From Octopus bimaculoides (taxonomy: Eukaryota): a stretch of DNA of 64,000 nt. The stretch lies in contig NC_068993.1 in assembly GCF_001194135.2 (NCBI RefSeq), positions 64,806,716-64,870,715 of the forward strand. The letters are read 5' to 3'. The position numbers were made by a program, and so were the translations under genes. The first letter of the stretch is position 1. Each line of letters begins with the position of its first letter. The notes beneath the pieces are model-generated. The model did no database searches, had not been told where the DNA came from, and saw only the letters and a list, made by a program, of their open reading frames with translations. This document shows positions 5,466-64,000 of this stretch, piece by piece.

Positions 5466-5490
5466 GTAAGAATTTTGGTTATTCTCAAAC

Positions 5491-40340: not shown

Positions 40341-40546
40341 ATTTATCTTGAATAATGTGTTGACTGTGTGTGTTTGTGTATGTACGTGAAATATTTGTGT
40401 GGATGTATGTGTTTGTACCTGTGATTCACATGTATGTGTGTGTGAGATTAGGTTCAAGTTCTCATAATATATGCTTGTGCATTTGCATCTATATGTAAAT
40501 GGATTCAGAATAATGTGTATGAATATGATTATATTCAGGTCATATG

Positions 40547-40965
40547 TACGAGGTTTGATCATTACGTATACGGACTGGTACTATAAAAGCAAAACTACAA
40601 CACGTACCAATTTGGCATTTAATCTCCTTCAAAGTAGTCCCCTTTGGAAGCCACATGCTTAATTTAGCGCTGCTTCCATTTATGGAAGCATTCCTGGAAC
40701 TCGTTTTCTTGGATAACCAGCAGCTGCCTCGTCGCATTTACTTTGATTTCCTCGACGTCCTAACAATTTCCTTTCAAGCCGGATTTGATTTTTGAGAAGA
40801 GGAAAAAGTCGCAAGGGGTAAGATCTGGGGAATGCTGTACCTAACCAAAACCCGCTGCACAAGCTGCGCTAAATGGGCAGGTGTGTTGTCATGGTGCAAT
40901 TGCCACTCACGGGGCACATGCAGTTGCGGCCTTTTCCAATGAATAGCATAAAACGTCACGGTAGT
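40547..40965 (-). mobile_element. mariner transposon 3' remnant
   Basis: WQLHHDNTPAH...PDLTPCDFFLFSKIKSGLKG...FQECFHKWKQR...GDYFEGD*; terminates at TA-cgaggtttgatc. Confidence 0.88.
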
Positions 40966-40984
40966 ACTCCTTGGACACTGTCTA

Positions 40985-42388
40985 AGAATAGATGAACGGT
41001 TGGTGAGAGCTGTACAAGACATGTACAGGGAAGCTATCGGTAAGGTGAAAGTTGGCAATGAGTAGAGCAAGGAATTTAGTTTACGGGTAAGAGTTCACCA
41101 GGGATTGGTTTCCAGCTCCCTCTTGTTTACCATAGTCCTCCAGGCCATAACAGAGGAATTTAAAACAGGATCCCTTGGGAGCTCATCTATGTTGATAACC
41201 TTGCTCAACTTACTGAATCATTGCCAGGAGTAGAGAAGAAATTTCAGGTGTAGAACCAAGGTCTGGAATCAAAAGGCTTTAGAGTTAATTTAGGAATAAC
41301 CAAAATCCTAGTAAGTAGGAAAACAGACAAATCACTGATCCCTTCAGTTCGATGGTCCTGTTCGATATGTAGAAATGGTGTTGGTAGAAACACCATATGG
41401 TGTATCCAGTGCAAGTGATGGATACATAAGTGGTGTTTGACAGTATCACTGGAAGGTTAATGGAGAAAGTAGTCTTTCTCTGTGAAAGATGTGCTACATA
41501 TAAAACAATAGCAACGTACAGAAAATAGACTCCCTCCGCAAATATCCGGGGTGGTTCTTAGAAATCATAGATAGTTTCCATTACTTCGGTAACCAACTTA
41601 GCGGTGTAAGAGATACTTCTGAAAGCATAGCTGCTAGAATAAGAACAGGCTGGGCAAAGTCCAAAGTGATGCAACCTTTGTTGATAACAAAGGGCCTCTC
41701 CCTCAGAGTGAAAAGTAGATTGTATAATACCTGTGTACGAACAGCTATGCTACATGGCAGTGAGATATGTGCTGTGACTACTGAGGACATGCAAAGGCTT
41801 GATGGGTAATATGCATGTACAACAGAATGTGATTTGAAAGAAAAATTGGGCATACGAGACATCAGATGCAGTGTGCAAGAGAGAAGATTGCACTGGTATG
41901 GTCATGTGATGTATGAGGACGAGGACAGCTGCATCAAGAAGTGCTGATCTCTAATTGTGGAGGAAATGTATGGAAGGTTTAGAGCCAGAAAGACGTGGGA
42001 CGGAGCAGTGAGAAAGGATCTTCAGACATTGGGCTTCACAGAAGAAATGTCTAGGGACCAAGACTTCTGGTGGCTTGTGCTTCAGAACACTCGTCAAGCT
42101 AAGTAAATTCGTGACTATCCATGCATGCAAGCATGTCCTCTACATCCCTCTCTCAGCCAAGGGATCCTACTCTTGCTGGTTCGTGAGTACTAATGCCACA
42201 TAAAAGCATTCATGTTGGCACCATGTGAAAGCGTCCATGCTGATGCTAGATTAAAAGAACTCTGTAAAGTGGTTTTGGCATATTACAAAGGATAACCAGA
42301 CAAATGGATCCCAGGCAGCAGCATTCTAGCTGGCCAACTCCTGTCAAACATCCAACCCATAACAGCATGGAGAACAGACGTTAAAAGT

Positions 42389-42425
<37 letters not shown>
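40985..42425 (+). mobile_element. 5'-truncated RTE-type LINE with (GAT)n tail
   Basis: LVRAVQDMY..VHQG..SSLLFTIVLQAITEEFKTG..WELIYVDNL (degenerate YADD region); 3' end catccaaccca..agcatgg..agacgttaaa(gat)n. Many stops and frameshifts. Confidence 0.88.
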
Positions 42426-42516
42426 ATATTTTATGTGTGTGCCTATATATCTGCTTATGATTTTTTTATTTTATAATGTTCAATTTTTTAATACAATCCC
42501 ATTTTATATTTTCTAG

Positions 42517-42650
42517 AAATTCAAAGAAATCCAGCCACTGCGCCTGGGTCATAGCTTCTGATGGCCCTGATGTTGTGAAATTATCAATAATTTACTCCAA
42601 ACTATCAAAGAAAGAAGACTGTAGTGAAGAAAGTATAAGTGTTTATGATG
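42517..42650 (+). CDS. CUB gene exon B2
   Basis: ttatattttctag|A acceptor (a second in-frame AG at 42533-42534 is possible); GATG|gtaagt donor; 134 nt, phase 2-1. Translates NSKKSSHCAWVIASDGPDVVKLSIIYSKLSKKEDCSEESISVYD(G). Confidence 0.85.
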
Positions 42651-44159
42651 GTAAGTCATCAACTGAACAAGAAGCAAATCTTCTGTATAATTCTGGAGAT
42701 GGTTGACATCTCTAACAATGTCATCACATTCAAACATTTAAGGACATCAGCTACAAAATAAAAGGTTTCTGTCCACAGTGTCCTCTTGCCACAGCTAGAT
42801 ACGCTCAGTATCTTTTCTATGTCAGCTTAAATACCATAAAGACAAATTAATAGAGGTCAGTGGCAGGAATGTGCTACAAGACAATTCCAAAATCCTGTCC
42901 TTGTATACAGTGAACTGGCAAGAGTCATTGCAGCATTACAATAAATATCTTCTGATACTAATTTCACCTCCTGGTATTCCAAGTTCAGATTTCACTGTGC
43001 TCAACATTATTTTTCAACTTTATGGGGTTCAAAAAGTATTTGTCAAGACTGGTGTATTGTAGGATTATTTGAATGGAATGCTTTGTGGAATGGTATTCCA
43101 ATTCTTTGCCTTCTGAGCTCAAATCCTACGGCATCCTACTTGAATGCTACATTTAATCCACCTCCCAGTTGAGCATCAACTTTTGGTTCTCAAGTGACTC
43201 CATTGTTGCAATCATTCAGGTCAAGCCTCCTGTCTGAAGGTTCCTTTCCCTCCTGTCAGTTTCAAAGACTCTGAACATGGCCATTCACTCTATCCTTAAT
43301 CTGACTAAGCAATAAAAAAAAAATAATGATTTACCAAAATATTATATCATTGACAGTAGAGAAGAGGGTCTTGTTTAAAGGATTCACTTGATTGAGTTGT
43401 CTATAAATGAAGAATGTGTGAAGTAATGGGGTAACATCTAAATGGTCCCTTGTCATTTTAGAGAAAGTCAGATCCCCTTCAAATTGCACCTGACAGGGTG
43501 AATAATTGAAAGGTAGACTGGATAATGTGGTCCTACACTGCCCAAACAAAAATTCAATATGTCTGACCATGAATTAAAGACTTATGTCTCTTCTTTAGAC
43601 AAGCCAACATTGCAATCTCTCCATGATGGTTCAACCTGCTAGAAAGATCTTATAGTTGTAGTAAAGGACATGTTAGTTGACATAGTCTTGAGTTCTCAGC
43701 ATATATGAAAATGACTGGATGGTCATGGATGGAAAGCTTTTGATCATAGGCCTGCTTGATCTGACCTCATTTAAGACAAACCAATAACAACGAAGAAAAA
43801 GTTGGTTGGCTGTGAACAAAATTCTTGTTCAGAATACAAATGCTTAAAAATTTTCATAACTTGAAATAATGAATTTTGTTATGAATTTTTCTCAATACAA
43901 AACATAATTTTTACCAATTTTACCATCTTCATTATTTTAAAACAGTAAGGAATTTGTGTTTGTGACACATGGCAAAAGTTAAATCTCTGCAGATGTTAAC
44001 AAAAATACAAAATTTTAAAAAAAGGTGAAAATTTAAACATTTACCAGAACATACAAATGTGTGAGAAAAAAAATATATATATATGTACGTATACATGTAT
44101 GTATGTATGTATGTATGTATGTATGGGTGTATGTATGTATGTAAGTAAGTCTCTTCTAT

Positions 44160-44310
44160 TTTTTAATTATTATAAATTTTCCACTGAGGAGGGAGCCGGT
44201 TTCCAACAAAGATACAAGTCTCCATCTTTGGGATGAAGTTAACACAGACAAATTCACATTTGGAACTTGAGAAAAGTCTTGCATATTTTTACTGTTCCAC
44301 TCACAGATTG
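44160..44310 (+). repeat. About 150-bp microsatellite-linked repeat, copy 3
   Basis: Close match to 39743-39895; follows (TATG)n. Confidence 0.85.
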
Positions 44311-44496
44311 CACTTGTAATCTACGAATCAGCCAGTCAATGTATGTATGTATATATGTGTATGCATGCATGCATGCATGTATGTATGTACGTGTGTATGT
44401 ATGTGTGCATGTATGTATGTATGCATACAAGCATCCATATATGTATATCATTAAGGTTTTCTACTGTACAAAAATAAATATTTTTGCTCTTTTCAG

Positions 44497-44646
44497 GTGA
44501 TTTAGTACCAAACCGCTTTCTCGGAATGTCCTGTGGAGAGGCAAAACCATCATATACATCAACAGGGAAAAAGCTAATGGTTATATTCTCTTCAAAGAGC
44601 TCAAATGGAAGTCACGGCTTCTTAGGATCCTATTATTCTGTTCCAA
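44497..44646 (+). CDS. CUB gene exon C2
   Basis: gctcttttcag|GT acceptor; CCAA|gtaagt donor; 150 nt. Translates (G)DLVPNRFLGMSCGEAKPSYTSTGKKLMVIFSSKSSNGSHGFLGSYYSVP. Confidence 0.9.
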
Positions 44647-45382
44647 GTAAGTTTATATCGGCTTACTTTCTGCAATGATGGTCCTTGACTGTGAATCTAA
44701 TTACAAATGTTTATTATTTGACAATAAATATACTCTGAATCAAAGTACATCTGTACACTTGCATTTGTACACCTGCCTGCAGTTTTGTGGAGCCACAGTC
44801 AATAAAATGCAATTAACTAATTAAAAAAAATACATTATTACATTACTCTAAACATCAATGTGAGTAGCATTATTGACACTGGCATTTAGCTGTGCATTTT
44901 AGTTTGTCTGACACTAGTTGTGAATACAAGTAGTCAAATACGATGGTTTAATTTTGCCTCAAAGCATGTCTCACACTGGTGCTGCCAAGAAAGTGAGAAA
45001 TTGTGCTTATTTCGACTTCGGGTTATGGCTGATACTAAGGTTTAAATGTGTTTCAAATAGGTTTTACTCTGGGATTTATTAATGCCTCCAAGTATGCAAG
45101 ACATTAATGTGTATTTGTCCCTAAAAGTATGTAAGAGTGTATTTCTAGGTTGTTCATGTTTAGTTTCTTCAATAAGGGCACAAGTTTTTCATGGTTTACC
45201 ACCAAAAATGCACGTTTGGACTCACCAAATTTCATTCTAATGTCTTTAAAGAATTAGGCTATTTCATACAAACACACACACACAACATAAGCACACTCAT
45301 ACGAACTCATTCAGACACATGAACACAAACTTTCTCTCTCTTTCACTCTTTCTTTCTTTTTCTCTCTCTTTCTCTCCTGCTT

Positions 45383-45464
<82 letters not shown>

Positions 45465-46099
45465 CTACAAACATTCACATGCACAAACATATCCTGTCAC
45501 ATAGTTTTAAGTCAGTTCCTATGGAAACAATCAATTACAACTTCTGCTATGTCAGCAATGTTCATTTCTGATTGGTCAAGATTACATAAGTTTAGGGTCT
45601 TGTTACTTTCCCATTAATACTTTCTTGAGAAAATTAATGTGATCTTTGTCATCATCATGCAAATCTACTTAAGTTTAGAAAATTTGAGATAATTCTAGGG
45701 ACTGGAAAGAATTTAAAAAGCTTCAATCTCTATTGATAAAAGAGATTTTTTAACCAGTGTCCTGTAATAAGATCTGGGCTTTGGGATGTCCTGCGTAGCA
45801 ATTATTCATTACTCCTTCGAGCAGTGCACAGTTGATTTGATCAACACACCTGTGGCATCTCTCTTCAAACTCATGTTTCCTTTGATTGGGGTTTTTTCCC
45901 TCACTCTTTCTTTCTAACAGGCTCATTATTTTATTGTGACTGGAGTTTGCTCCCACAACTAATGGTGTTGTTGTTGTTGTTGCTGGATGTTCTGTGATGG
46001 TAAGTGTGGGAGAAGCAGATTGACTACTACTGCTGCTGCTGATGATGATGATGATGACCATCATTGACCTTGATGTTATAGCTGAATGTTGTCTGTTTG

Positions 46100-48950
46100 G
46101 TGGTGTTCCCATTCGTTGAGTGTAATGATTGACTTATTAGTTTGCATATAATTCCTTGTCTGTTTAGATCTTTTGCACTTAAGTTTAATTCTGGACGTTT
46201 GATGTACCACAGACTTTTCAGCCTTTGCGTAAATCCCGTGCTTTAGGCTCAGCTTCCAAGCATAATTCATATACTTGTTTATTTATTTCATAATCCTATA
46301 TTGTGCATATTGCCGTGATTACGATGAAGAAGACTAGTATGTTTAGCCATGAAGACTTGTGTCTTTTTACTTTCAATTTTCATTTAAAATTAAATAAGAT
46401 GCTGTTCTTCAAAAGTTCTGACACATTTCTGCTGATTTCATCAAGTGTCCAGTCTAATATCCCAAATGTTGGTACTAGCACAAGCACTGCAGCAGTATTA
46501 TGAAGTATGGTCTTATTGAATGCAAATAACTCCTGAGTTCCATATTTCCTGGAGTCTGCTGAAGTATTCTTTTGTTATTATGGCTTTACTCACAGCTTAT
46601 ACAATATTTTCATCAATATTGAGATATTAATAAAATATTCATCATTGAAGACAAGGGAGATAGACAAGCCATTGATGTTCATGCTGTCTGGTCAATAATC
46701 TCTCCTCAGTTGACTATCATGTGTGAGCATTCATTTTGACCAAACTCTGTTTCTTTTTTTCCTGTGAGAATGTTGTGACAAGTTTTAATTGTTTCTTGTT
46801 GTTCATGCTACCAGTAGGCCATTAACCAAAAATGTGTGGGTGAAATTAGTTTTATTCTTTTCTGCCCATCCTAATGTGAAGCCTTGGTACTTCCGCAACA
46901 ATACTGCCAGGGGCTGACAAGGGGTTTCACTCTAACAACATTAGAGATAAACTTGGAATGCTCCCATTGAATAGCATTTGTAACAGTATTGCTTTGGTTG
47001 TTAAGGATAACTGTGTTGTGGTCAATCTTTCAATAGCATTAACCATAGTAGCTGCTGCTTTGGGAAGATGTAGTGATTCTTGCATCTATGAACAAGGGAC
47101 AGTTAAATATTTCTCCGAGTGTAGCCATATTGTTAGACGGTTACAATGATAGTTCCTTAAGGTTAGCTTTGTTGATAAGATGCAGTTCAGCACAGCCCCA
47201 GACTCCCTTTTTCCTCCTGCCTGTTCATTGCTTATTATTCCATTTGTTTGGCAATGATCTTAAAGAAACACATTCAAACAACCTGTGTATACTTTGTCCG
47301 TAAGATTCAAGATGTTACGGGCCAGTAGTGTTTGACCACATGGGTCTCTCTCTCTTCATGGATTCAGATGTAATCTGTGCAACTGTCAACCAATTTAATT
47401 CAGTGTCCATTGTTTTTAACAGAGTTGTGAGAATTATTCTGGAGAGTGAGTTTTTTTCTACCAGTAGCATAATATCCGGTTTCTTCTAGGCGATTCTCCA
47501 TTTGAAAGTTTCATAATGACAGTTAAGAGTGTTTCACTGGTGTTGTTATACATTTTGGGAAAGGCATTTACACAATACCCACTTTGTAGGTTGTTTAACC
47601 ATGCTGTATCGCAAATGTGTTCTTTGTTTATATTCCACATTCCCCACCTCAGTGACTCTAGGTTCTCTTTGGGAGGATCATTTACTACCTTGATGGTATA
47701 CCTTGATGGTATACCTTGATGGTATACCTTGATGGTATACCTTGATGGTATAGCCTTTCATATTTCAATACACAGCATTTACAGGATAGGCTGGATTTCA
47801 GGCAACTTGCAGTTTATTGTTTTGCATCTATTGTAAATTTTTAACATAATGAAGCTTTTCACTTACTTTTCATAGGTTGTATTTGAGGACATTCTGTTTG
47901 CTTGTGAGTGTTTCTTGGTGGTAATTATCAAACAATTTGGAGAATCTATCATGCAGTCATAACTGGCAGTTCTTGAATTCACTTTTCACTTCCCATTTGA
48001 TGAGTTTCCACCTGTACAATTTATTTCCCAACTCTGTTGATGTTGTTTTAGAGCAAATATATCTATTTTTGCTCTGTATTATGTTTTGGATCATGTCTTT
48101 TATTCTCATCTTTTGGCTCACAGTTACTACTGCACAATATAGTAGAACACTTATTATCCAAAAACTGGGAATTTGAATTTTAGTTGCTCCCTCGCAATTT
48201 CCCCACTCATGGATAACATCAGATTGGTGAGGATTTTTCCTCAACACTTGTCAGGATCATTCTTTTATACAGTGCTTTATGCATGTAAATAGTGAAGTTC
48301 TGTTTAGAACTCTATGCAAGCTGCAATTTTAATTTTCGTATTCCTCACTTCTGTTTTCGGAGAATATGAGCAACTGCCGCTTGTCCATTTAATGGTGGTG
48401 CTTTGTCATTGCTGCCATGCTTGTCTTGATCTTACTTCTTGCCATTCACGTCTTGATCTTACTTCTTGCCATTCACAGTCGCTTCATGGACAAAGTTTAT
48501 TATGTTGTCAGTACAAGTATTATCATTTTGGATAAGTGATTACATTTGGTAAAGTGGTGCATTTCTTTTCAACAAATGAAGCTTCTTGGCATAATTGTCT
48601 CTCTGCAAACTTTGAGAATATTAAGCATTTTTTATCCCAATATTCTTTTAGTCTCTTCATGTAGCTTGTTGATGGATCTTCCCTGACCTTTCTATAGAAC
48701 TGGTATTGGTCTTGGTTCAGTTCGAAAAAGTCTACTGGAATTTCTCACGATAGATCCATGATCTGCAATAGCTGACTCCTGATACTTGTCTTGCTATGGT
48801 AATATGTAGTAGTAATTTGCCACATGGTATGTATTAACTTAATTTCGCTGTTCGATTACTGCTACGATCTTTTCTTCCAAAATGTTGTTTCGTTGCATTT
48901 ATTCAAAGGTAAATAGTATTCTTTATCTGAGAGAATATAAAGATCGCCTT
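46100..48950 (-). mobile_element. Degenerate R2-superfamily (R4/Dong-like) non-LTR element: N-terminal region plus RT
   Basis: N-terminal SYMKRLKEYWDKK..FAERQLCQEA (48560-48680). RT motifs HYWPVT, KVYTGCLNVFL*DHCQTNGISNEQAAG, WGCAELHLINKA and QLKLVTTFSQ..EFGQNEC. Many stops and frameshifts. Confidence 0.75.
47688..47752. repeat. 13-bp tandem repeat x5 (CCTTGATGGTATA)
   Basis: Five exact units read directly. Confidence 0.95.
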
Positions 48951-49154
48951 ACCATCATGCCTGTATTCAACGCCATGATATGTAGTATGTACGCATGCAT
49001 GTGTGTGTGTGTGTGTGTGTGTGCATACATACATGTATGTATATGTGCAGTTTTGTATGTTTGGTTTTATGTGTGTATTTTCCAGAGGTTTATTGATTAA
49101 GTATTAAGCATGTGTAGACATACTCATACTTAAACAATAAACTTCTGGAAAGTT

Positions 49155-49470
49155 TTACAGATTTTTACAATTCCAGTGATGTTTTTGAATTAGCTTTCTC
49201 CTTTCTGGTTTTCTGAAGCCTAATTTCTCTAGATTGGTATTTATGCAGTGTATTACATATCCCAGTACTCCAATAATTACAGGTATAAACCTGAACTTGT
49301 TATCTGGATAGAATAACTGCAGATTTCTCAATAGTTCAGAGTAGGTATTCTCTGTTTTGCTGATCTTTAGCTTTATGTTAACATCCGCTGGGCAGCTAAT
49401 TTCCACAACTCCGCACAGTTTCTCTTTTCTATCCCAAATCATTATATCAGGTCTATTGTGTTTGCATTTT
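49155..49470 (-). mobile_element. Restriction-like endonuclease (RLE) fragment of an R4/Dong-like element
   Basis: HNRPDIMIWDRKEKLCGVVEISCPADVNIKLKISKTENTYSEL..FIPVIIGVLG matches the RPD..E..CP..K..Y RLE motif. Confidence 0.85.
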
Positions 49471-49974
49471 ATTGTTGCATGTATGTATGTATGTGTGTAT
49501 GTATGCATGTATATGTGTGTGTGTGTGTGTGTGTATTTGCATGTATGTCTGCAAAGCAAGTGTACACCACCAGTCAACTTACCCACAATTTCACAAATTT
49601 TAACACCAAATATTGTAAATAATAACATGGTTACTTACTAACTAGAAATAAAAGAGTTGATCTGGGACTAAATAGCTACAACAACAATTTGGAATATATA
49701 TTTTTTTTTAGTTGTTTCAATCTATATGCTATAGCCATGCCAATGTAGTAGAAATGAGATGGAGTTATGTTATATTGGAAAGATATTGTTTCAATATAAA
49801 ATACTACAAGGTATATTATGAGGTCAATTCAGTAGATCTCTCTTTCAAAAATTACCTGAACTACAAAAGCTCAACATATTAGTTTGCAAAATGGATGACA
49901 ATTTCACAAATACATATATCTTTTATATTATCCTCAGAATCAGGCTATGATATGGCTTGACATTTGAAATACAG

Positions 49975-50096
49975 GTGCAACAATATCCACTGGGCCTTCC
50001 AAATGTTTCCATAAGCCTGGTTTCATTGACTCAACTCAAAGCAAATTGAAAATGACATTTGCTCATGATGCCATGCAAATGGATCAAATTTTGTGA
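49975..50096 (+). pseudogene. Candidate decayed or alternative CUB C-type exon
   Basis: tacag|GT start as in C1 and C2. Reads (G)ATISTGPSKCFHKPGFIDSTQSKLKMTFAHDAMQMDQIL*. The spacing C-x8-ST-x2-KL-x-M-x-F matches C2, and NGS follows in a shifted frame. Confidence 0.45.
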
Positions 50097-52493
50097 TTGG
50101 AAAGTGATCTCTTTAACCATTTGGCCATACTGGAATGATGTACACTAAATTGGCATCTAACTGTATTATTCGGTGAAACTGACAGCTTAGAGCAGTCGGT
50201 TGTTGGTGGTGCTCTTTCCTGCTATTGCTGTTATTTTTGTTGTTAATGTTACTGTTATATGGTGTGATGTGATACAATGGCAAAAAGATGTCATTTGAGA
50301 TATTAAGTTGTTGTTTCATATGGATGTGGTACATATTAAAAATATATCTGATAATAAAGTAAAACAGAATGTGCTATTGATTTTGATACATTGATAGAAA
50401 TAAAAGTATTACATTATATAAAATAGAGAAAAGGAAATAACTAATTTCATTAGATATATGAAACTAACACAGAAATATCTATCTATATCTATCTATNNNN
50501 NNNNNNNNNNNNNNNNNNNNNNNNNNNNNNNNNNNNNNNNNNNNNNNNNNNNNNNNNNNNNNNNNNNNNNNNNNNNNNNNNNNNNNNNNNNNNNNNNNNN
50601 NNNNNNNNNNNNNNNNNNNNNNNNNNNNNNNNNNNNNNNNNNNNNNNNNNNNNNNNNNNNNNNNNNNNNNNNNNNNNNNNNNNNNNNNNNNNNNAGAGAG
50701 AGAAAACGAAAGTGTGTAATGAACTAATATCTGATACAATATTATTCTTTGATGCAATATAATGACAGTGATGGTGTTTTGTGCAGTTATTGCACCAAAG
50801 CTAGCAAAGATGATTTGTACTTTGCTATTGCAAGCTGTAAGACTATATTACTGCTTTACAGGATGTTTGTCTGCACTATATGACTATTATAACACTAAAA
50901 ACTACCTAGAAAAGTAAAAGAAGAATTATGTTCAGCAATAAAAACAAATAAGAATGTTATTCTATGTACGCTGAACGTTTGACAAAATATTGGTTGATAA
51001 ATGTCACAAGCACCATTGATTTATATGACCTCTTAAACTCAAAGTTCAGATACTTATTTCTTTTGACTCTGCATAACGTGAAGAAATTATTATAATAAGA
51101 TTGACCAAAGACAGGAATTAGTTTTATGTGGATGTATGAATGAGAGAGAGTTAAATCATTCTAGTTTGTCATTATAACTGCTTGTGTTTGGAGGTAATAC
51201 ATACATTTATGCTTACATACATACACAATATATATATATATATATANNNNNNNNNNNNNNNNNNNNNNNNNNNNNNNNNNNNNNNNNNNNNNNNNNNNNN
51301 NNNNNNNNNNNNNNNNNNNNNNNNNNNNNNNNNNNNNNNNNNNNNNNNNNNNNNNNNNNNNNNNNNNNNNNNNNNNNNNNNNNNNNNNNNNNNNNNNNNN
51401 NNNNNNNNNNNNNNNNNNNNNNNNNNNNNNNNNNNNNNNNNNNNNNNNNNNNNNNNNNNNNNNNNNNNNNNNNNNNNNNNNNNNNNNNNNNNNNNNNNNN
51501 NNNNNNNNNNNNNNNNNNNNNNNNNNNNNNNNNNNNNNNNNNNNNNNNNNNNNNNNNNNNNNNNNNNNNNNNNNNNNNNNNNNNNNNNNNNNNNNNNNNN
51601 NNNNNNNNNNNNNNNNNNNNNNNNNNNNNNNNNNNNNNNNNNNNNNNNNNNNNNNNNNNNNNNNNNNNNNNNNNNNNNNNNNNNNNNNNNNNNNNNNNNN
51701 NNNNNNNNNNNNNNNNNNNNNNNNNNNNNNNNNNNNNNNNNNNNNNNNNNNNNNNNNNNNNNNNNNNNNNNNNNNNNNNNNNNNNNNNNNNNNNNNNNNN
51801 NNNNNNNNNNNNNNNNNNNNNNNNNNNNNNNNNNNNNNNNNNNNNNNNNNNNNNNNNNNNNNNNNNNNNNNNNNNNNNNNNNNNNNNNNNNNNNNNNNNN
51901 NNNNNNNNNNNNNNNNNNNNNNNNNNNNNNNNNNNNNNNNNNNNNNNNNNNNNNNNNNNNNNNNNNNNNNNNNNNNNNNNNNNNNNNNNNNNNNNNNNNN
52001 NNNNNNNNNNNNNNGGCTAGAGTTGAAGTGCTCAGCATGAGCTAGAATTCATCTTATAGTAAAAATAGATACATAAGGGTGGAAAATCACAGGAATAATA
52101 CCATATGTCCAACGCAAGATACAATATGTGTGTTCAATTCCTTCAAGAATCAATAAATGAATTTATAGTATTCAGTCTCTAAAGTGTCTAAAAGGTACGG
52201 TAAAAAGACAAGCAAATACAACAATAAAAACTTTAGAAATATGAATGTTCAAAATATTTATTAAAAAAAATATTTATAAATATGCATGATTTCTAAGTTG
52301 TATAAAAATATGACAATTAAAGTTAAAACATTACGATGTGTAAACGTACATTATGATATAACATATAATGGGTAAATATATATTTACCCATTCACTACAG
52401 CTGTTTCCAACAAATTATTAATTGATTAATGGAAACATTACAGCATTAGAAGAAACCGTTTTCATCAGCTAAATACATGAGCCACAACATTTC

Positions 52494-57744: not shown

Positions 57745-58626
57745 TACATTGCAGAAGTTTTGAGACGATTTTAGGAGAATGAAAGTTACAACTGTTCGAA
57801 ATTATTATAATTTTAGTATATCCTTACTATACATTTTAATAAGCTAACTTGCCAACTGTTGTTATTCTAGATTGAAGGAGACGTTTGAAACAGTACCTTG
57901 AACACATTCTGCTAAACACTGTTTCTCACAGTTTCTGACTAGTTTGCAGAATGCAGTCGAGACGTGAAGACAATTTGGAAGCATGCTATGCAAAAGAGTT
58001 TCGAATTAAGCTGAGCAAAAACGCTACACGCTACAGAAACTTATAAAACGTTCCAGGATGCTTTGGGATTAACTTGTATGAACCGAGCCCCTGTTTTTCG
58101 CTGGCACAAAAGGCCAGGAAAAGCAAGTCCACCGGGAAACTCATGCTGATCCCCTTTTTCAACAGACAGGACATCATCCACTCGGTTCCTTCTGGCGAGA
58201 CTGACAGCAAAGAGTATTCTGTGGAGATGTCGAGGAAGTTCAGGAAGAGATTTCATCGCAAAAGTTCAGAGCAACTGCCCCAGTTCCATCCTGGTAAACG
58301 AATACATCAGTCTATTGTTCCATCCTGGCAATCAACTACTCGACAGAAACAGGCGTCAAAACTATCCCTCTCCTTCCCTACACTCCAGACCTTGCTCCGT
58401 GGTAACTCTTGGTTGTTCCCAAAGTTGAAGGAGGAGATGAAGGAGGCTGTGACAAGGATCCTGAAAATCTTCACTCTGAAGGACTTCCATGAAGCCTTCA
58501 CAAAGTGGCTAGAGTGTTACAACATATGTACTGAAGTCAGAAGATCTAACTTTGAAGGAGATAGTTTGATATTTCTTTGAAATTAATTAATATCTCGCTT
58601 GAAAAAGTCTCAAAACGTCTGGATGA
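57745..58626 (+). mobile_element. Internally deleted mariner element with both TIRs
   Basis: TIRs ta-cattgcagaagttttgagac / gtctcaaaacgtctggatga. N-terminal HTH (ETYKTFQDALG..MNRAPVFRWHKR) is joined directly to the catalytic part (KSTGKLMLIPFF, PYTPDLAP, WLFPKLK, FEGD). Confidence 0.85.
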
Positions 58627-59830
58627 CCAAAATTACATTAAAATATCTTGAAATACTAAAGAGTAAATTTATTCAATAAAATATCCATTGGCTTCAACCA
58701 CAGCCTCCAGACGACTTCGAAATCTCCTGCAACTCTTCTGGACGGTCTCCGTGTTTAATTTGGTGAATGCTGCCGTAATCCTTGCCTTCAGTTCATCTTT
58801 GGTGTTACAAGGAGTTTTGTTGGTCTCTCACCGAACTTTGCCCCACACATAATTATCAAAGGAGTTGCAATCTGGAGAGTTAGGTAACCAGATTTTAGGG
58901 GTGTTGTGGTCGCAGAAATTGTCTGACAACCATGACTGGGTTCTCCTGCTTGCGTCGCATGGTGCAGAGTCCTGTTGCCAGACATAGGTTCTTCCAGCAT
59001 CCACCCGCTTAACCCAGGGCAGCACTACCTCCTCCAAGCACTTGATGTAGGCCTCCGTGTTAAGTTTATGGCCGTGTGGGAAGGTGAATGGGGGCATAAC
59101 GTCACCATCACTAATGATCACTCCTATGATGTTGAACAGATGTTTGATTTTTATTACTCTTGGTACATGTTTTGGGGACACGGCAAGGCAACAGTTGTTC
59201 TCTGTGTTCACCATTTGATCCTTGCAGAAATTTTTCTCATCTGAGAAAAACCAAAGCATATTCGGTTGGAGGGGATGCTTGAGATTGTTCAAAAGCTTCG
59301 TAGTGTGGCCTTTCCTCTTGTCCTTGATGGCTTGGGATAAAAATTGGCCCTTTCTCATCTTGTATGAGGAATAGCGAATGTCTTAATGCACTGCCTGCCT
59401 GATAAGAAACTCAGACACTCCCATGTCCCTGGCGATGACTTGGAGGGATCGTTGTCAATCGTGATCTGGATCTCACCAACAAATTCAGGAGATCTTTTCT
59501 TATCAGAACAATCAGAGTGAGTTTTCCGAGCTGCCCCCCTACCTTCGCAATCACCATTAAACTCGTCCAACTCTTTCTGAATCTTCTGCACTGTCCTCGG
59601 GTTGACACCCACAAACTCTGAAACGTTCGTATTGGAGCTTCCGGCGCGAATTCCAAGCGGTACAGCATGTCGTTTCCAAATTTCTGGCAGTGTATTGCGT
59701 CATGGTACTGTTTTCCTTATAGACGGTGCCCAACTGATCCTACTATACTGTGTAGACGACTAAATCAAAAACAACAATGCGTATGCGCGAAATAAAAATT
59801 ATAAAATGACAATTTACTCATCGCACCCTG
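58627..59830 (-). mobile_element. DD37D (maT-type) IS630-Tc1-mariner element, degenerate, one TIR missing
   Basis: WFFSDEKNF...YVWQQDSAP-...-NSPDCNSFD, with 37 residues between the last two Asp (counted by hand). TIR cagggtgcgatgagtaaattgtcat followed by TA at 59831-59832; frameshifted N-terminus. Confidence 0.9.
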
Positions 59831-59979
59831 TACATTTGTGTGTGAATGTATGTTTGTATGCGTGTACGTATGCATATATCAAAACATTTTTTTTTTCTAG
59901 GGAGTATGTCAATTTATATTCATTTATATTTACACTCATCAATAAACGTTTCATTTTCCTTTTTTGACATTTCTGCCAG

Positions 59980-60104
59980 CTCGATGTCCCGATCTTGGTC
60001 CATACGATCAAAAAATGCAGACGAAAACGTGGTATTAGAAGTAGCATTTTCAGATATTTACTTGTCTTCTGGTTGTGAAACGGATTCTGTGTCCGTCTAC
60101 GACG
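59980..60104 (+). CDS. CUB gene exon B3 (Cys2 replaced by Arg)
   Basis: atttctgccag|C acceptor; GACG|gtaagt donor; 125 nt, same length as B1; open frame SMSRSWSIRSKNADENVVLEVAFSDIYLSSGCETDSVSVYD(G). Confidence 0.8.
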
Positions 60105-60272
60105 GTAAGTATTGGCCTTTTTCCGTCTTTCGCTATAAACTACCACAAATTAATAGACATTATTGCTTTGTTGCTATACCTGTCTCCCATAATATGCTGT
60201 GTACATATAATGTTTTATGTTGACCAAAGCTTTTATTCCCTTTATCCTTTAGATATTTAGTTTTTCTGCCAG

Positions 60273-60343
60273 CTTCGCTATTAACTATTTAACTTGAAGA
60301 CCGGGATCGTCGGAAACTGAGAAAGGTGTCTCTGTCTACAAAG
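60273..60343 (+). pseudogene. Candidate decayed duplicate of exon B3 with in-frame stop
   Basis: Same acceptor tttctgccag|CT as B3; ends GTC TCT GTC TAC AAA G|gt versus B3 GTG TCC GTC TAC GAC G|gt; 71 nt, phase 2-1. Translates FAINYLT*RPGSSETEKGVSVYK. Confidence 0.45.
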
Positions 60344-60397
60344 GTGTGGTCGTAAAATATTGATACATTTGACTACGATAGGAAATATAATGACTGA

Positions 60398-61966
60398 TGT
60401 TACACGCACGCTCACGCACCAGGTCGAGGCGGTCGACGAATAATAAGTTGGTCGAGTGAGTCTTAATTGTGAGAAGGAAGGAAGCGAGCGATCCGGAACG
60501 AGGATCGTCGACCGCCTCGGCCTGGTGCGTGAGCGTACGTAACACAAGGACACACACACACTCGCGGTCGATATCGCCGCCGAGACGACAGCCTACCGAT
60601 TGCAGCTACAGATCGCCGGCGGCCGACGCCGCCGCCGTACCATCGTTCTGGATTCGCCTTCTCCGAACGACGCTGAGTGTACGCGGCAGCAACTGCCCGG
60701 CGATGGTAGGCGTGTCCTGCCGCTGCATGGCAGATTGCGTAAGCATCGAAATGCCGTCTCTCGACCACCTTATTATCCATCAACCGCCTCGGCCGCTTGC
60801 GTGAACGTGCATAAGCGTGCCAAATACACGAACACACACACTCGCGATCGGTATCGCCGCCGAGACGACGGCCTTTCAATCACCACCGAAGTGTTGACTT
60901 GGATTCGCTCACTCTGAAATACGCTGCGTGAATGCGGCGGCGACCACCCGGTGACTCCCGGGTGACCGTCGGTGTGTCACGCCCAGGCGTGGCCGACCAC
61001 GAAACCATTGAACTGCTGTCTCTTGCTCCTTAATATATTCCGAACCTCCTTGAGGTGTCATAGTATCTAGAGCCGTGAGTGTCCTGGGTGGTCCGACCCG
61101 CAATATTGTGGGTCGGACAGCGTCGCGGTATCGACCGCGTCGGTCACGCGGCTCCGGACGACCCCTAGACGACGGACTTTCGGTCGCACCTCCGCATCGA
61201 CGGCTGCAGCCGCCGCTGAATTGTCGGCCGGCTCTTTCTTCGCTCCCGATCGCTCGCTTGCTTCCTTCTCACTGCTAAAATTCACTCGTCCAAATTATTA
61301 TTCGTCGACCACCTCGGCCTGGTGCGAGTGTAACACACGGACACACACACTCGCGGTCGGCATCGCCGCCGAGACGACAGCCTATCGATTGCAGCAACGG
61401 ATCGCCGGTGGCCGCTGCCGCCGAACCGTCGTTCTAGATTCGCTCGCTCTGAACAACGCTGCATGTACGCGGCAGCTACCACCCGGCGACTGTTGGCGTG
61501 TCCCGCCGCTGCGTGGCAGACTGCGTAAGCCGCAATTTGGTGGGTCGGACACCGTCTCGGTATCGTCCGCATCTGTCACGCAACTCGGGACGCCGCCTAG
61601 ACGACGGACTTTCGATCGCACAGCCGCTGATCCCTCGCTGCAATCAATAGGCTGTCGTCTCGGCGGCGATACCGACCGGGAGTGTGTGTGTCCGTGTGTT
61701 ACGCACGCTCACGCAACAGGCCGAGGCGGTCAACGAATAAGTTGATCGAGTGAGTCTTAGCAGTGAGAAAGAAGCAGGCGTGCGATCGGGAGCGAGGAAA
61801 CAGCTGGCCGACACTTCGGCGGCGGTCCCAGCCGGCGATGCGGCGGCGCGAAAGTCCGTCGTCAAAGTGGCGTCCCGAGCCGCGTGACAGACACGGTCGA
61901 TACGGCGACGCTGTCTGACCCACCAAATTGCGGGTCGGACCACTCGGGACACTCACGGCTCTAGAT
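60398..61966. repeat. GC/CpG-rich modular repeat with nested inverted repeats (foldback-like)
   Basis: About 330-bp inverted arms at 61066-61395 and 61637-61966 (atctagagccgtgagtgtcc / ggacactcacggctctagat); about 45-bp hairpin stem at 60398-60545; three direct copies of a 180-235 bp module. Confidence 0.85.
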
Positions 61967-61974
61967 GACAAGCT

Positions 61975-64000
61975 CGTTCATGCGTTCGTTCGTTTGTTCT
62001 TACGTACGTACGTTCGTTCGTTCATTCCCTCGTTCTTTTGTTCGTTCATTCGTTCGTTCGTTCGTTCTTTCGTTCGTTAGTTTGTACATTTGTCCGCTCG
62101 TTCGGTCTTTTCTTCGTTCGTTCGTTCGTTTGTTCTTTCGTTTGTTCGTTCTTTCGTTCGTTTGTTCATTCGTTCGTTCGTTCTTACGTACGTACGTCCT
62201 TTCGTTTGTTCGTTCTTTCGTTCGTTTGTTCATTCGTTCGTTCTTACGTACGTACGTTCGTTCGTTCGTTCATTCGTACGTACGTACGTTGGTTCTTTTG
62301 TTTCTACGTACATACGTTCGTTCATTCGTGCGTTCGTTCGTACGTACGTTCGTTCGTTCATTCGTTCGATCGTTATTTTGTTCTTTCGTTCGTTCGTTCA
62401 TTCGAACGTACGTACGTTCGTTCGTTCTTTCGTTCGTACATACGTACGTTCGTTTGTACCTTCGTCCGTTCGTTCGGTCATTCGTTCGTTCGTTCGTTCT
62501 TTGGTACGTACGTACGTACGTTCGTTCGGTATTTCGTGCCTTCGTTTATACGTACGTACGTACGTTCGTTCGTTCGTCCTTACGTTCGTTCGTTCGGTCG
62601 TTAGTTCGTTCTTTCGTTCCTTCGTTCGTACGTACGTACGTTCGTTCTTTAGTTTGTATCTTCGTCCGTTCGTTCGTTCGTTTGTTCCTAGGTACGTACG
62701 TACGTACGTTCCTTCGTTCGTACGTAGGTACGGTCGTTCGTAGGTACGGTCGTTCGTAGGTACGGTCGTTCGTTGGTTCGTTCGTTCGTTCATTCGTTCG
62801 TACGTACATACGTAAGTTTGTTCGTACGTACTTACGTTCGTCCGTCCGTTCGTTCATTCGGTCATTCTTACGTACGTACGTAGGTACGTACGTTTGTTCT
62901 TTCTTTCTTTCGAACGTTCGGTCGTACGTACGTGCGTTCGTTCGTTTGTAATTACGTATGTACGTACGTACGTTTATTCGTTCGTTCGTTCGTTCGTTCA
63001 TTCTTACGTACGAACGTACGTACGTTCATTCGTTCGACCGTTCGTTCTTTCACTCGTTCGTTTGTTCATTCGTTCGTTCGTTCTTACGTACGTTCGTTCG
63101 TTCATTCGTACGTACGCTGGTTCTTTTGTTCCTACGTACGTACGTTCGTTCGTACGTTCGTTCATTCGAACCTACGTACGTTCGTTCATTCGAACCTACG
63201 TACGTTCGTTCATTCGAACCTACGTAAGTTCGTTCATTCAAACGTACGTACGTTCGTTCTTTCGTTCGTACATACGTACGTTCGTTCGTTCGTTTGTACC
63301 TTCGTCCGTTCGTTCGCTCTTTTGTTCGTTTGTTCGTTCATTCTTTGGTACGTACATACGTACATTCGTTCGTTCATTCCTTCGTTCTTTCGTCCGTTCT
63401 TTCTTTTGTTCGTTCGTTCCTTCGTTCGTTCTTTTGTTCGTTCATTTGTTCGTTTGTTTGCTTCGTTCGATAGTTCATTCGTACGTACGTTCGTTCTTTC
63501 TTTCGGTCGTTCGTATGTACGTTCGTTCGTTCGTTTGTTTGTTTCGTTCGTTCATTTGTTCTTTCTTTTGTTCTTTCATTGTTCGTTAGTTTCGTTCGTT
63601 CGTTAGCTTCGTTCGTATCTACGTTCGTTCCAACGTCCGAACGTACGAACGTACAAATGTTCATTCGTTCTTTCGTTCCTTCGTTCGTTCGTACGTACGT
63701 ACGTACGTTCGTTCAATATTTCGTACCTACGTTTATACGTACGCACGTTCGTTCGTCCTTACGTTCGTTCGTTCGTTCGGTCGGTCGTTAGTTCGTTTGT
63801 TCATTCATTCGTTCGTTCGTTCGTTTATTCGTACGTACGTACGTTCGTTCTTTAGTTTGTACCTTCGTCCGTTCGTTCACTCGTTCTTATGTTCGTTCGT
63901 TCGTTTGTTCCTAGGTATGTACGTACGTACGTTCCTTCGTTCGTACGTAGGTACGGTCGTTCGTTTGTTCTTTAGTTCGTTCGTACGTAGGTACGTACAT
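61975..64000. repeat. TTCG/TACG compound satellite (runs off the window end)
   Basis: More than 2 kb of interleaved (TTCG)n and (TACG)n with longer internal duplications. Confidence 0.95.

What the first reader, a model, noticed from the sequence alone, without database searches (positions are those of the whole stretch)
60398..61966. CpG-rich modular foldback island: three modules shuffled in direct and inverted orientation
Seen: an abrupt GC/CpG-rich 1.6-kb block in AT-rich DNA. Module U (tcgaccgcctcggcctggtgcg..acacacactcgcggtcg..cgccgccgagacgacagcct..ttgcagc) is at about 60508, 60781 and 61305, and inverted at 61637-61730. Module V (ccgcaat..gtgggtcggaca..gacgacggactttcg) is at about 61098 and 61530, and inverted at 61845-61935. 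Module W (gaataagttg.tcgagtgagtctta..gtgagaa.gaag) is at about 60438 and 61735, and inverted at 61235-61305. Together they form a 900-bp foldback with about 330-bp arms plus a separate 45-bp stem. The copies are diverged yet CpG-rich, and no protein motif is evident. Inference: an undescribed non-coding element. Candidates are a foldback or Helentron-type transposon end (those carry subterminal inverted repeats plus microsatellite), a structured RNA, an unmethylated regulatory island, or a rearrangement-prone satellite or subtelomeric border.
Basis: partly seen in the sequence, partly recalled or inferred. Interest (0 to 1): 0.7.

Follow-up and report, generated by a model that had tools for sequence, protein, structure and literature searches.

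The report
Rearranged GC-rich repeat cluster beside microsatellite
The GC-rich island is real, but it is a decayed, non-coding cluster of copies of one ~430-bp repeat unit, some flipped into inverted orientation, sitting beside a long TTCG/TACG microsatellite inside an intron; it is most likely ordinary repetitive DNA, not a new structured RNA or a new kind of element.

Summary
Window 60398-61970 is a sharp block of 61% GC with CpG o/e 1.41, set in DNA of 36% GC. It holds direct and inverted repeats, including a 915-bp foldback with ~350-bp arms.

The "three shuffled modules" reading is wrong. U, V and W are contiguous parts of one 432-bp unit (V-W'-U). A ~275-bp deletion variant also occurs. 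The unit is probably an old dimer of a ~205-bp monomer.

The layout is a short head-to-tail array with two inversion junctions. At each junction a single-copy spacer continues one arm, as in fold-back (strand-switch) inversions.

Copies are 77-91% identical and roughly equidistant. The arms show no co-variation. A single unit folds no better than shuffled sequence. There is no Rfam, Pfam or protein-database match and no target-site duplication.

The block abuts a compound (TTCG/TACG)n array of at least 2 kb. It lies in an intron of a multi-CUB gene.

Best reading: a satellite-like repeat cluster rearranged by strand switching. A Penelope-like complex insertion fits 61056-61970 and stays a live rival. 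Helentron/HINE and foldback-transposon membership fail or cannot be tested.

No eukaryotic nucleotide database was available, so copy number and family remain unknown. Interest is low to moderate.

The parts
60398..60504 (.). Fragment L. This is an inverted-orientation piece of the unit: the first ~42 nt of U reversed, then W 1-65. It forms the left boundary of the island against AT-rich unique DNA.
   Evidence: It is 84-87% identical to 61695-61798 (D6/D9, 8, 30). The nhmmer U-profile hit at 60439-60398(-) has E = 3e-9.
60404..60540 (.). Small foldback. The 36-bp arms are 60404-60439 and 60505-60540, 94% complementary. The 65-nt spacer is W 1-65. The inversion junction is at 60504/60505 (GAGGA|TCGTCGACC).
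   Evidence: (I10). The only Rfam 'hits' here are sub-threshold miRNA hairpin models.
60505..60756 (+). Copy a. This is the U module plus a collapsed ~35-bp linker, i.e. the short ~275-bp unit variant.
   Evidence: It is 83-87% identical to 61302-61530.
60757..61055 (+). Copy b. It is a second short-variant unit, the most diverged copy (77-80% to the others). It ends with a ~18-nt U-start-like stub.
61056..61097 (.). Outer-end segment: TGTCAT(AGT)ATCTAGAGCC... = V 1-33 plus 6-9 nt. It occurs only at the two outer ends of the big inverted repeat (mirror at 61934-61970). It is absent from the internal tandem junction at 61530.
   Evidence: Alignments.
61098..61529 (+). Copy c. This is the complete 432-bp unit: V 61098-61195, W' 61196-61301, U 61302-61529. 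V recurs at 61530, which gives the period of 432.
   Evidence: (D4, spacing 432).
61147..61431 (+). Ancient internal duplication within the unit. 61147-61226 resembles 61352-61431 (81 bp, 70% identity, offset 205 bp). This implies an older ~205-215-bp monomer.
   Evidence: nhmmer cross-hit E = 5e-7. Local alignment score 38 versus shuffles 18.7 +/- 2.4, with 0 of 300 reaching it.
61409..61623 (+). Single-copy spacer of the big foldback. It is the rest of U plus partial V copy d (61530-61628). It simply continues the left arm. The inversion junction is at about 61627/61629 (..CAGCCGC|TGATCC..).
   Evidence: (I4).
61624..61970 (-). Copy R, the right arm of the foldback. It is an inverted copy of 61056-61408 (U 1-102, W, V), and its V end abuts the microsatellite.
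   Evidence: 84% identity over 345 nt, E = 6.5e-105. Global identity 86.6%, ts 23: tv 23, 21 gap columns.
61091..61118 (.). 28-nt palindrome in V, GTCCGACCCGCAATATTGTGGGTCGGAC, mirrored at 61913-61940. The tandem junction at 61530 falls in its left half.
   Evidence: (D8, I17).
61974..64000 (+). Compound imperfect (TTCG)n/(TACG)n array of at least 2 kb that runs off the window. It keeps one 4-nt register for about 1.5 kb, has CpG o/e ~3.3, and contains one ~30-bp inverted patch at about 63618-63652.
   Evidence: TRF: period 4, 503 copies, 72% matches, 0% indels. Register and uniqueness in the window. Tetramer counts: TTCG 138, TACG 78, TTCT 28, TTTG 24, TTCA 23. Inverted patch.
59970..60106 (+). 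Context: a first-half CUB-domain exon (..VLEVAFSDIYLSSGCETDSVSVYDG|gtaagt) of a multi-CUB gene on the + strand. It places the island and the microsatellite in the following intron.
   Evidence: The Pfam CUB match is weak (E = 0.013). Three similar exons end in VYDG at 5344-5466, 16730-16933 and 42461-42703.

Best explanation
What it is:
- The island is a small, old, non-coding cluster of one GC/CpG-rich, satellite-like repeat family.
- The unit is 432 bp and is itself an ancient dimer of a ~205-215-bp monomer. A ~275-bp deletion variant also occurs.
- The copies lie head to tail at the proximal edge of a compound (TTCG/TACG)n array, inside an intron of a multi-CUB gene.

How it arose:
- Two strand-switch (fold-back type) events produced the direct-plus-inverted pattern. 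They occurred during replication or break repair, or during the process that first laid down the copies.
- At 61627/61629 the sequence runs on for 215 nt past the left arm and then switches to the complementary strand. This copies 61056-61408 backwards.
- At 60504/60505 the same happens on a smaller scale, with a 62-65-nt spacer.
- The copies then decayed independently by about 6-7% each.

What it does:
- It has no demonstrable function.
- Its main physical consequence is that the DNA, or the intronic pre-mRNA, can form a long imperfect hairpin.

Shown versus inferred:
- Shown: single family, unit anatomy, junction positions, lack of coding potential, lack of intrinsic RNA structure, lack of TSDs.
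- Inferred: the strand-switch mechanism, the near-simultaneous origin of the copies, and the absence of function.
For: - Every repeat in 60398-61970 maps onto one V-W'-U unit.
- The period is 432 (D4).
- The unit contains an internal 81-bp duplication at offset 205, with score 38 versus 18.7 +/- 2.4 for shuffles. So the sequence is tandem-repeat in nature at two levels.
- Short and long unit variants co-occur at one locus.
- Both inversion junctions have a single-copy spacer that continues one arm, and at most a few nt of microhomology. Spacer plus short microhomology is the signature described for fold-back inverted duplications (PMC3907307).
- A further ~30-bp inverted patch lies inside the microsatellite. 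This points to a local propensity for strand switching.
- The arms are 13% diverged with indels, so this is not an assembly palindrome.
- Three-way counts show about equal private and shared changes (W 6/5/4, U 4/5/9). That is star-like decay with no pairing-preserving co-variation.
- A single unit folds no better than shuffles, z = -0.41 and -0.27.
- Negative searches: no Rfam family, no Pfam domain, no protein relatives, no tRNA head, no TSD.
- No bacterial, archaeal, plasmid, phage, viral or metagenome match.
Against: - The block is compositionally foreign (61% vs 36% GC) with a sharp left edge. That fits delivery by a mobile element better than purely local origin.
- The two foldback arms share identical outer termini.
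- A ~33-42-nt end segment is missing from the internal tandem junction. Transposition models explain this more specifically.
- In U, arm c is closer to copy a (91%) than to its mirror R (86.5%). So R need not have been copied from c.
- A local fold-back of only ~350 nt needs a second switch back to the microsatellite side, and no trace of that is visible.
- Copy number elsewhere in the genome is unknown.
Confidence: 0.5

Rival explanations
1. The block is a complex insertion of a non-autonomous, hammerhead-less Penelope-like (PLE-type) retroelement. On the minus strand, 61627->61056 is a partial tandem: a 5'-truncated copy followed by a full 432-bp copy. 61629-61970 is the inverted 5'-truncated copy lying head to head with it. 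Both 3' ends point outward and carry a ~33-42-nt 'tail'. The microsatellite is the preferred target. The left cluster 60398-61055 would be an older insertion of a shorter relative.
For: The architecture described for PLEs matches 61056-61970 point by point (PMC8557442):
- partial tandems that form pseudo-LTRs;
- an adjacent inverted 5'-truncated copy;
- a 30-40-bp tail at an end;
- microsatellite insertion bias;
- non-autonomous head-to-tail forms;
- Naiad/Chlamys clades that lack hammerheads.

Support from this window:
- The two arms share outer termini, while the inner ends are truncated.
- V 1-33 is absent at the internal junction at 61530.
- Copies c, d and R are equidistant.
- The composition is foreign to the surroundings.
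Against: - There is no RT or GIY-YIG ORF and no hammerhead.
- The left cluster does not obey the 'common 3' end, variable 5' end' rule in the same orientation.
- The described microsatellite targets are (TA)n, (CA)n and (C)n, not TTCG.
- The unit's internal ancient duplication looks satellite-like.
- No other copy is available to show mobility.
- The only PLE hint in the window, a GIY-YIG-like ORF at 25452-25793, is sub-threshold (E = 0.014) and has no database relatives.
Confidence: 0.22
2. The block is part of a non-autonomous Helentron (HINE / 'pearl'-type) or Helitron-like rolling-circle element carrying central satellite-like repeats and a hitch-hiking tetranucleotide microsatellite. Read on the minus strand, the order is left flank (beyond the window), microsatellite, tandem repeats, right flank.
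For: - HINEs combine a 4-nt microsatellite with a short array of ~160-220-bp satellite-like repeats (PMC7492417; PMC4067079). The order microsatellite -> repeats fits on the minus strand.
- Inner copies of tandem Helitrons are often 3'-truncated. The inner V copy here likewise lacks V 1-33.
- A 12-bp-stem palindrome lies 22 nt before a CTAG near the arm ends.
Against: - HINE microsatellites are short, whereas this one is at least 2 kb.
- HINE repeats are all in one orientation, whereas here two segments are inverted.
- No 11-15-bp subTIR or 3' palindrome is evident at the left boundary.
- Homology between the arms continues 6-9 nt past CTAG, and the next base is A, not T. So the canonical Helitron 3' end is not met.
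- The motif differs from the reported GTCY class.
Confidence: 0.1
3. 61056-61970 is a foldback (FB/Galileo/Tetris-like) DNA transposon whose long TIRs are built from satellite monomers.
For: - It has long (~350-bp) inverted arms and no coding capacity.
- Tetris shows that foldback elements can carry ~220-bp tandem repeats and seed satellites (PMC4079207).
Against: - There is no TSD at any candidate boundary.
- The 'middle domain' is just the continuation of the same unit.
- Each arm holds less than one unit, not an array.
- The same family continues outside the arms in copies a, b and L.
Confidence: 0.05
4. The block is a functional element: an unmethylated intronic CpG island, alternative promoter or enhancer, or a long hairpin RNA source (siRNA or editing substrate) kept by selection.
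For: - It meets the numerical CpG-island criteria: 1.57 kb, GC 0.61, o/e 1.41.
- CpG sites differ between copies only moderately more often than other sites (~36% of CpG dinucleotides vs ~12% of other positions). This suggests low germline methylation.
- The hairpin would be transcribed within the host intron.
Against: - The arms have diverged freely: 13% substitutions plus 21 gap columns, and no excess of shared changes.
- A single unit has no intrinsic structure.
- There is no Rfam match.
- The high CpG content is a property of the repeat sequence itself. The neighbouring microsatellite is even higher (o/e 3.3).
Confidence: 0.08
5. The block is an assembly artefact or contaminant: a mis-joined GC-rich contig or a chimeric palindromic read.
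For: - The window is a gapped draft with ten N runs.
- The composition jump at 60398 is abrupt.
Against: - There is no N run between 52014 and 64000.
- The arms differ by 13% and by indels, unlike read-chimera palindromes.
- There is no match to bacterial, archaeal, plasmid, phage, viral or metagenome collections.
- No coding signal is present.
Confidence: 0.04

Closest known systems
Fold-back (inverted-duplication) rearrangements with a single-copy spacer (PMC3907307); short templated inverted insertions at breaks (PMC11724301)
   Same: Both have inverted and non-inverted copies separated by a single-copy spacer that continues one arm. Both have at most a few nt of microhomology at the switch point. 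The pattern recurs at this locus: two junctions in the island and a small patch in the microsatellite.
   Different: The scale is hundreds of bp inside a tandem repeat, not kb-Mb chromosomal duplications. The events are old (13% divergence), so microhomology cannot be scored exactly. The second junction, back to the microsatellite, is undefined.
Penelope-like element insertion complexes: pseudo-LTRs, an inverted 5'-truncated copy and a 30-40-bp tail, including the hammerhead-less Naiad/Chlamys clades and their non-autonomous derivatives (PMC8557442)
   Same: 61056-61970 has a partial tandem plus a head-to-head inverted truncated copy, with shared outer ends. A ~33-42-nt end segment is missing at the tandem junction. 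The block adjoins a microsatellite, and it has no hammerhead.
   Different: There is no RT/EN ORF and no demonstrated autonomous partner. The left cluster does not fit. The target motif, TTCG/TACG, has not been described. Mobility is unproven.
Helentron-associated interspersed elements (HINE, DINE-1, pearl, Cg_HINE) carrying satellite-like repeats and a tetranucleotide microsatellite (PMC7492417, PMC4067079)
   Same: Both are non-coding, with a short array of ~200-bp satellite-like repeats directly adjoining a 4-nt microsatellite. Both are typical of invertebrate genomes.
   Different: The microsatellite here is at least 2 kb rather than short. Inverted repeat copies are present. SubTIRs, the 3' palindrome and TT insertion sites were not seen or not testable. 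The motif is not of the GTCY type.
Tetris / foldback transposons with internal ~220-bp tandem repeats that seed satellites (PMC4079207)
   Same: Both have long inverted arms made of satellite-type sequence, no ORF, and a monomer size near 205-220 bp.
   Different: There is no TSD, no distinct flanking or middle domains, and less than one unit per arm. This block is GC-rich, whereas TIR-220 is AT-rich.

Membership tests
Penelope-like element (autonomous or non-autonomous) | ORF with reverse transcriptase and GIY-YIG endonuclease (autonomous copies) | tested here: not met
   No Pfam domain in any island ORF. No protein relatives. A non-autonomous derivative is still possible.
Penelope-like element (autonomous or non-autonomous) | Partial head-to-tail tandem (pseudo-LTR) plus an adjacent inverted 5'-truncated copy, with common 3' ends outward | tested here: inconclusive
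   Met for 61056-61970. Not met in the same orientation for 60398-61055.
Penelope-like element (autonomous or non-autonomous) | A 30-40-bp 'tail' extension at an end of the insertion, absent from tandem junctions | tested here: inconclusive
   V 1-33 (+TGTCAT) is present at both outer ends and absent at the 61530 junction. It could equally be part of a longer unit lost by deletion.
Penelope-like element (autonomous or non-autonomous) | Hammerhead ribozyme in the pseudo-LTR (canonical clades only) | tested here: not met
   No hammerhead at E <= 10 in 60200-62100, and none in the window at the gathering threshold. Naiad/Chlamys also lack it.
Penelope-like element (autonomous or non-autonomous) | Many dispersed, 5'-truncated genomic copies; 3' similarity to an autonomous partner | not testable with these tools
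   No eukaryotic genome or repeat library was available. No other copy in the 64-kb window.
Helentron non-autonomous element (HINE) | 11-15-bp subterminal inverted repeats near both termini, and a short palindrome within ~8-35 bp of the 3' end | tested here: inconclusive
   The putative 5' end lies beyond 64000. Nothing convincing was seen by eye at the left boundary, 60338-60460. No dedicated subTIR or palindrome search was run there.
Helentron non-autonomous element (HINE) | A short, eroded microsatellite in the left flank, followed by tandem repeats all in one orientation | tested here: not met
   The array is at least 2 kb. Two repeat segments are inverted.
Helentron non-autonomous element (HINE) | Insertion within TT, shown by empty sites | not testable with these tools
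   No paralogous or orthologous empty site was available.
Canonical Helitron | 3' end CTRR about 11 nt after a 16-20-nt palindrome, followed by host T; 5' TC | tested here: not met
   A CTAG lies 22 nt after a palindrome. But arm-to-arm homology continues past it (ATGACA), and the next base is A.
Foldback transposon (FB/Galileo/Tetris) | 7-10-bp target-site duplication flanking long terminal inverted repeats | tested here: not met
   The longest flank match is 2-4 nt and not adjacent to the ends.
Foldback transposon (FB/Galileo/Tetris) | A middle domain distinct from the TIRs; TIRs with arrays of subrepeats | tested here: not met
   The spacer 61409-61623 is the continuation of the same unit. 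Each arm holds less than one unit.
Structured non-coding RNA | Thermodynamic stability beyond composition, covariation, or a match to a curated family | tested here: not met
   Unit z = -0.41 and -0.27. No gathering-level Rfam hit. No excess of arm-shared changes. The z = -41 of the whole foldback is a trivial result of the duplication.
Satellite-like tandem repeat (short dispersed or local array) | Head-to-tail monomers of one family with unit variants or higher-order structure, non-coding | tested here: met
   Period 432 with an internal 205-bp offset duplication. Short and long variants occur, with about 5 unit-equivalents.
CpG island (Gardiner-Garden type numerical definition) | Length > 200 bp, GC > 0.5, CpG o/e > 0.6 | tested here: met
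   1.57 kb, GC 0.607, o/e 1.41. Regulatory or unmethylated status cannot be tested here.

The most novel reading that the evidence does not exclude
The 432-bp unit is a previously undescribed non-autonomous, ribozyme-less retroelement of Penelope type (or another target-primed element). It inserts into, or seeds, CpG-containing (TTCG/TACG)n arrays. On this reading, the head-to-head copies and the ~33-42-nt terminal extension at 61056-61097 / 61934-61970 are footprints of its integration mechanism.
Probability: 0.18. Interest if true: 0.5.

Novelty: new member of a known kind. Interest (0 to 1): 0.28.

Why it matters
- If it is only a rearranged repeat cluster, it matters mainly for annotation. 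It should be masked as repeat and not called as a CpG-island promoter or ncRNA. It also marks a spot prone to assembly error and structural variation inside a multi-CUB gene intron.
- The diverged foldback is a clean small-scale example of strand-switch inversions inside tandem repeats next to a hairpin-prone (TACG)n tract.
- If the Penelope-like reading holds, the locus would give a compact, ORF-free example of the tandem/inverted/'tail' insertion signature, with a new microsatellite target. That could help in working out the poorly understood PLE integration mechanism.

Tried and rejected
Searches for relatives elsewhere, all empty:
- exact-pattern scans of metagenome contigs with a U core and a V pattern;
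- viral contigs;
- bacterial and archaeal genomes;
- blastn against plasmids and phages;
- the longest island ORF against 5.8 billion proteins, hoping that spurious ORF calls would reveal other copies;
- full-text search of papers for six core strings.

Attempts to identify the organism or host gene:
- Concatenated CUB exon peptides found nothing.
- TE ORFs gave only distant Tc1-like transposases, at most 72% identity.
- Their contigs carry uninformative sample names and hold no island core or TTCG array.

Readings rejected:
- Hammerhead or other ribozymes, and tRNA-derived SINE heads.
- Coding potential.
- Canonical Helitron 3' end.
- Foldback-transposon TSDs.
- Long high-identity higher-order repeats in the microsatellite (the repeat finder output was uninformative).
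- The idea that the arms extend into the microsatellite. The similarity of 61000-61053 to the reverse complement of 61976-62030 scored above shuffles (13 vs 4.6 +/- 2.2). However, it rests on a few GAAC motifs, and that stretch is better explained as the unit linker.
- The GIY-YIG-like ORF at 25.4 kb as proof of PLEs in this genome. It is sub-threshold, has no relatives and has no RT upstream.
Full report
**Observation**

The window is a gapped eukaryotic draft:
- GC is 0.36, and there are ten N runs, mostly next to (TA)n/(CA)n tracts.
- It carries Tc1-like and non-LTR remnants.

Against this background, 60398-61966 stands out:
- GC is 0.607 and CpG o/e is 1.41, versus 0.357 and 0.71 for the rest of the window (0.31 in 40-50 kb).
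- The large foldback spans 61056-61970. Its arms are 61056-61408 and 61624-61970, 84-87% identical over about 345 nt (E = 6.5e-105), with a 215-nt spacer.
- The small stem is 36 bp at 94% identity, 60404-60439 / 60505-60540, around a 65-nt loop.
- No other copy exists in the remaining 62 kb, by blastn or by profile search.

**Anatomy**

The "three shuffled modules" are consecutive parts of one unit:
- V is 61098-61195, W' is 61196-61301 and U is 61302-61529.
- V recurs at 61530, so the period is 432 bp (D4).
- A short variant of about 275 bp, U plus a collapsed linker, makes up copies a (60505-60756) and b (60757-61055).

A profile search found homology inside the unit:
- 61147-61226 resembles 61352-61431 (81 bp, 70% identity, offset 205 bp).
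- The alignment score is 38, against 18.7 +/- 2.4 for shuffles, with none of 300 shuffles reaching it.
- The unit is therefore probably an old dimer of a ~205-215-bp monomer, so the sequence is tandem-repeat in nature at two levels.

The layout, left to right:
- L: an inverted fragment, 60398-60504.
- a: direct.
- b: direct, and the most diverged copy.
- c: a full direct unit preceded by a 33-42-nt end segment at 61056-61097.
- d: a partial direct V, 61530-61628.
- R: an inverted copy of 61056-61408, at 61624-61970.
- After R comes the microsatellite.

**Junctions**

- At 61627/61629 the second V copy stops (..CAGCCGC) and the reverse complement of U position ~102 begins (TGATCC..).
- At 60504/60505, W position 65 is joined to the start of a direct U.
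- In both cases a single-copy spacer (215 nt and 62-65 nt) simply continues one arm. There are at most a few nt of possible microhomology, and later divergence blurs it.
- Spacer plus short microhomology is the signature reported for fold-back inverted duplications (PMC3907307).
- A ~30-bp inverted patch also sits inside the microsatellite, at about 63618-63652.
- No target-site duplication flanks any candidate boundary.

**Evolutionary signals**

- Copies are 77-91% identical. Copy b is the outlier. In U, a-c is 0.91, a-R is 0.87 and c-R is 0.865.
- With a third copy as outgroup, the counts of "arms agree / c alone / R alone" are 6/5/4 in W and 4/5/9 in U.
- In V they are similar once the non-homologous first columns of copy d are discounted, which I judged by eye and did not recount.
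- The copies therefore form a star. This gives no sign of pairing-preserving co-variation or of arm-to-arm conversion, and no evidence that R is c's closest relative.
- Across all pairs there are 82 transitions and 62 transversions. Of CpG sites, 111 are shared and 62 are present in only one copy, 40 of those with a TG/CA partner.
- So CpG decays somewhat faster than other sites, but far less than in heavily methylated DNA. Every copy keeps o/e 1.3-1.7.

**Tests of function**

- There are no Rfam hits at gathering thresholds. At E <= 10 there are only sub-threshold hits, mostly miRNA-hairpin models on the inverted repeats, and no hammerhead.
- There are no tRNA genes.
- The island ORFs have no Pfam domain, and the longest one has no relative among 5.8 billion proteins.
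- As RNA, a single 432-nt unit folds no better than dinucleotide shuffles on either strand (z = -0.41 and -0.27).
- The z = -41 of the whole foldback is the trivial consequence of the inverted duplication.
- The structured-RNA reading is therefore not supported.
- The block meets the numerical CpG-island criteria, but so does the adjoining microsatellite (o/e 3.3). High CpG is a property of the repeats themselves.

**Surroundings**

- To the right, a compound imperfect (TTCG)n/(TACG)n array runs from 61974 past the window end.
- TRF gives period 4, 503 copies, 72% matches and no indels.
- The array holds one register for about 1.5 kb and is unique in the window.
- In register, the tetramers are TTCG 138, TACG 78, TTCT 28, TTTG 24 and TTCA 23. 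The two deamination products are thus symmetric.
- To the left, a first-half CUB exon (59970-60106) ends in VYDG|gtaagt (weak Pfam CUB, E = 0.013).
- It matches three similar exons upstream on the + strand.
- The island and the array therefore lie in an intron of a multi-CUB gene.
- That gene is not in the protein collection, and the organism could not be identified.

**Interpretation**

My best explanation (confidence about 0.5) has three parts:
- The block is a satellite-like, non-coding repeat cluster at the edge of a microsatellite.
- Two strand-switch events, during replication, repair or the initial laying-down of the copies, produced its direct-plus-inverted pattern.
- The copies then decayed neutrally.

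The main rival (about 0.22) is a complex insertion of a non-autonomous, hammerhead-less Penelope-like element.
- In its favour:
  - The published PLE architecture has partial tandems, an inverted 5'-truncated copy lying head to head, a 30-40-bp tail, microsatellite bias and non-autonomous head-to-tail forms (PMC8557442). It fits 61056-61970 well.
  - It also explains the foreign composition and the shared outer termini.
- Against it:
  - The left cluster does not fit.
  - There is no ORF or partner element.
  - The unit's internal duplication looks satellite-like.
  - The only PLE hint in the window, a GIY-YIG-like ORF at 25452-25793, is sub-threshold and has no database relatives.

The other readings:
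- Helentron/HINE elements share the pairing of repeats with a tetranucleotide microsatellite (PMC7492417, PMC4067079). The array here is far too long, two segments are inverted, and the diagnostic termini are absent or outside the window.
- Foldback transposons of the Tetris type (PMC4079207) fail on TSDs and on domain structure.
- An assembly palindrome is unlikely, because the arms differ by 13% and by indels.
- Contamination is unlikely, given empty searches of the bacterial, archaeal, plasmid, phage, viral and metagenome collections.

**Limits and verdict**

- No eukaryotic genome or repeat library (Dfam/Repbase) could be searched.
- Copy number, dispersal, empty sites and family assignment therefore remain open.
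- The feature is real, and its architecture is now resolved.
- The evidence points to ordinary repetitive DNA of a known kind, not a new class of element. Interest is 0.28.
- The most novel reading still allowed is a new ribozyme-less PLE-type non-autonomous element associated with (TTCG/TACG)n arrays (probability about 0.18).

Noticed in passing
window 5344-5466, 16730-16933, 42461-42703, 59970-60106 (+): There are four exons, each encoding the first half of a CUB domain and ending ..VYDG before a GT donor. This implies a large multi-CUB gene with 13-25-kb introns spanning the whole window. No matching protein exists in the 5.8-billion-protein collection.
   Followed up: partly
window 58074-58580 (+) and 58828-59358 (-): Two decayed Tc1/mariner-type transposase fragments lie about 1 kb upstream of the island. 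For 58828-59358 the best database relatives are Tc1-like DDE transposases at up to 72% identity. 58074-58580 was judged mariner-like by eye only and was not in that search.
   Followed up: partly
window 25452-25793 (-): This ORF has a GIY-YIG-like motif (..FYCITYSQCNKNYIGETG..). The Pfam GIY-YIG match is E = 0.014, below the cut-off. It is possibly a 5'-truncated Penelope-like endonuclease remnant. No RT lies upstream and it has no database relatives.
   Followed up: partly
window 49155-49628 (-): This ORF resembles the C-terminal region of non-LTR retrotransposon ORF2 proteins. It is 35% identical over 82 aa (E = 8e-19) to a protein with a zf-RVT domain.
   Followed up: partly
window 40000-50000 versus 59600-60400: CpG o/e is strongly heterogeneous outside the island: 0.31 in 40-50 kb but about 1.0-1.35 in the 800 bp left of the island. 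This suggests mosaic germline methylation, with the exon and island neighbourhood hypomethylated.
   Followed up: no
window 63618-63652: A ~30-bp patch of the microsatellite is in reverse-complement orientation (CGAAC/GTACG instead of GTTCG/CGTAC). It is a third small strand-switch event at this locus.
   Followed up: partly
window 60525-60540 and the equivalent positions in the other U copies: The 5' part of U carries a roughly 4-nt-periodic CG-containing stretch (GCGTGAGCGTACGTAA). In copy a it includes (CGTA)2, the same motif as the (TACG)n blocks of the neighbouring array. A possible evolutionary link between the unit and the microsatellite was not tested.
   Followed up: no
window 10352-10673, 13964-14026, 20479-20637, 24010-24109, 36156-37106, 50497-50694, 51247-52014: From the ORF translations, these N runs are bordered by (TA)n/(CA)n/(GA)n-type microsatellites. 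Simple repeats therefore seem to break this assembly. The 2-kb TTCG array at the window end may be similarly unreliable in length.
   Followed up: no
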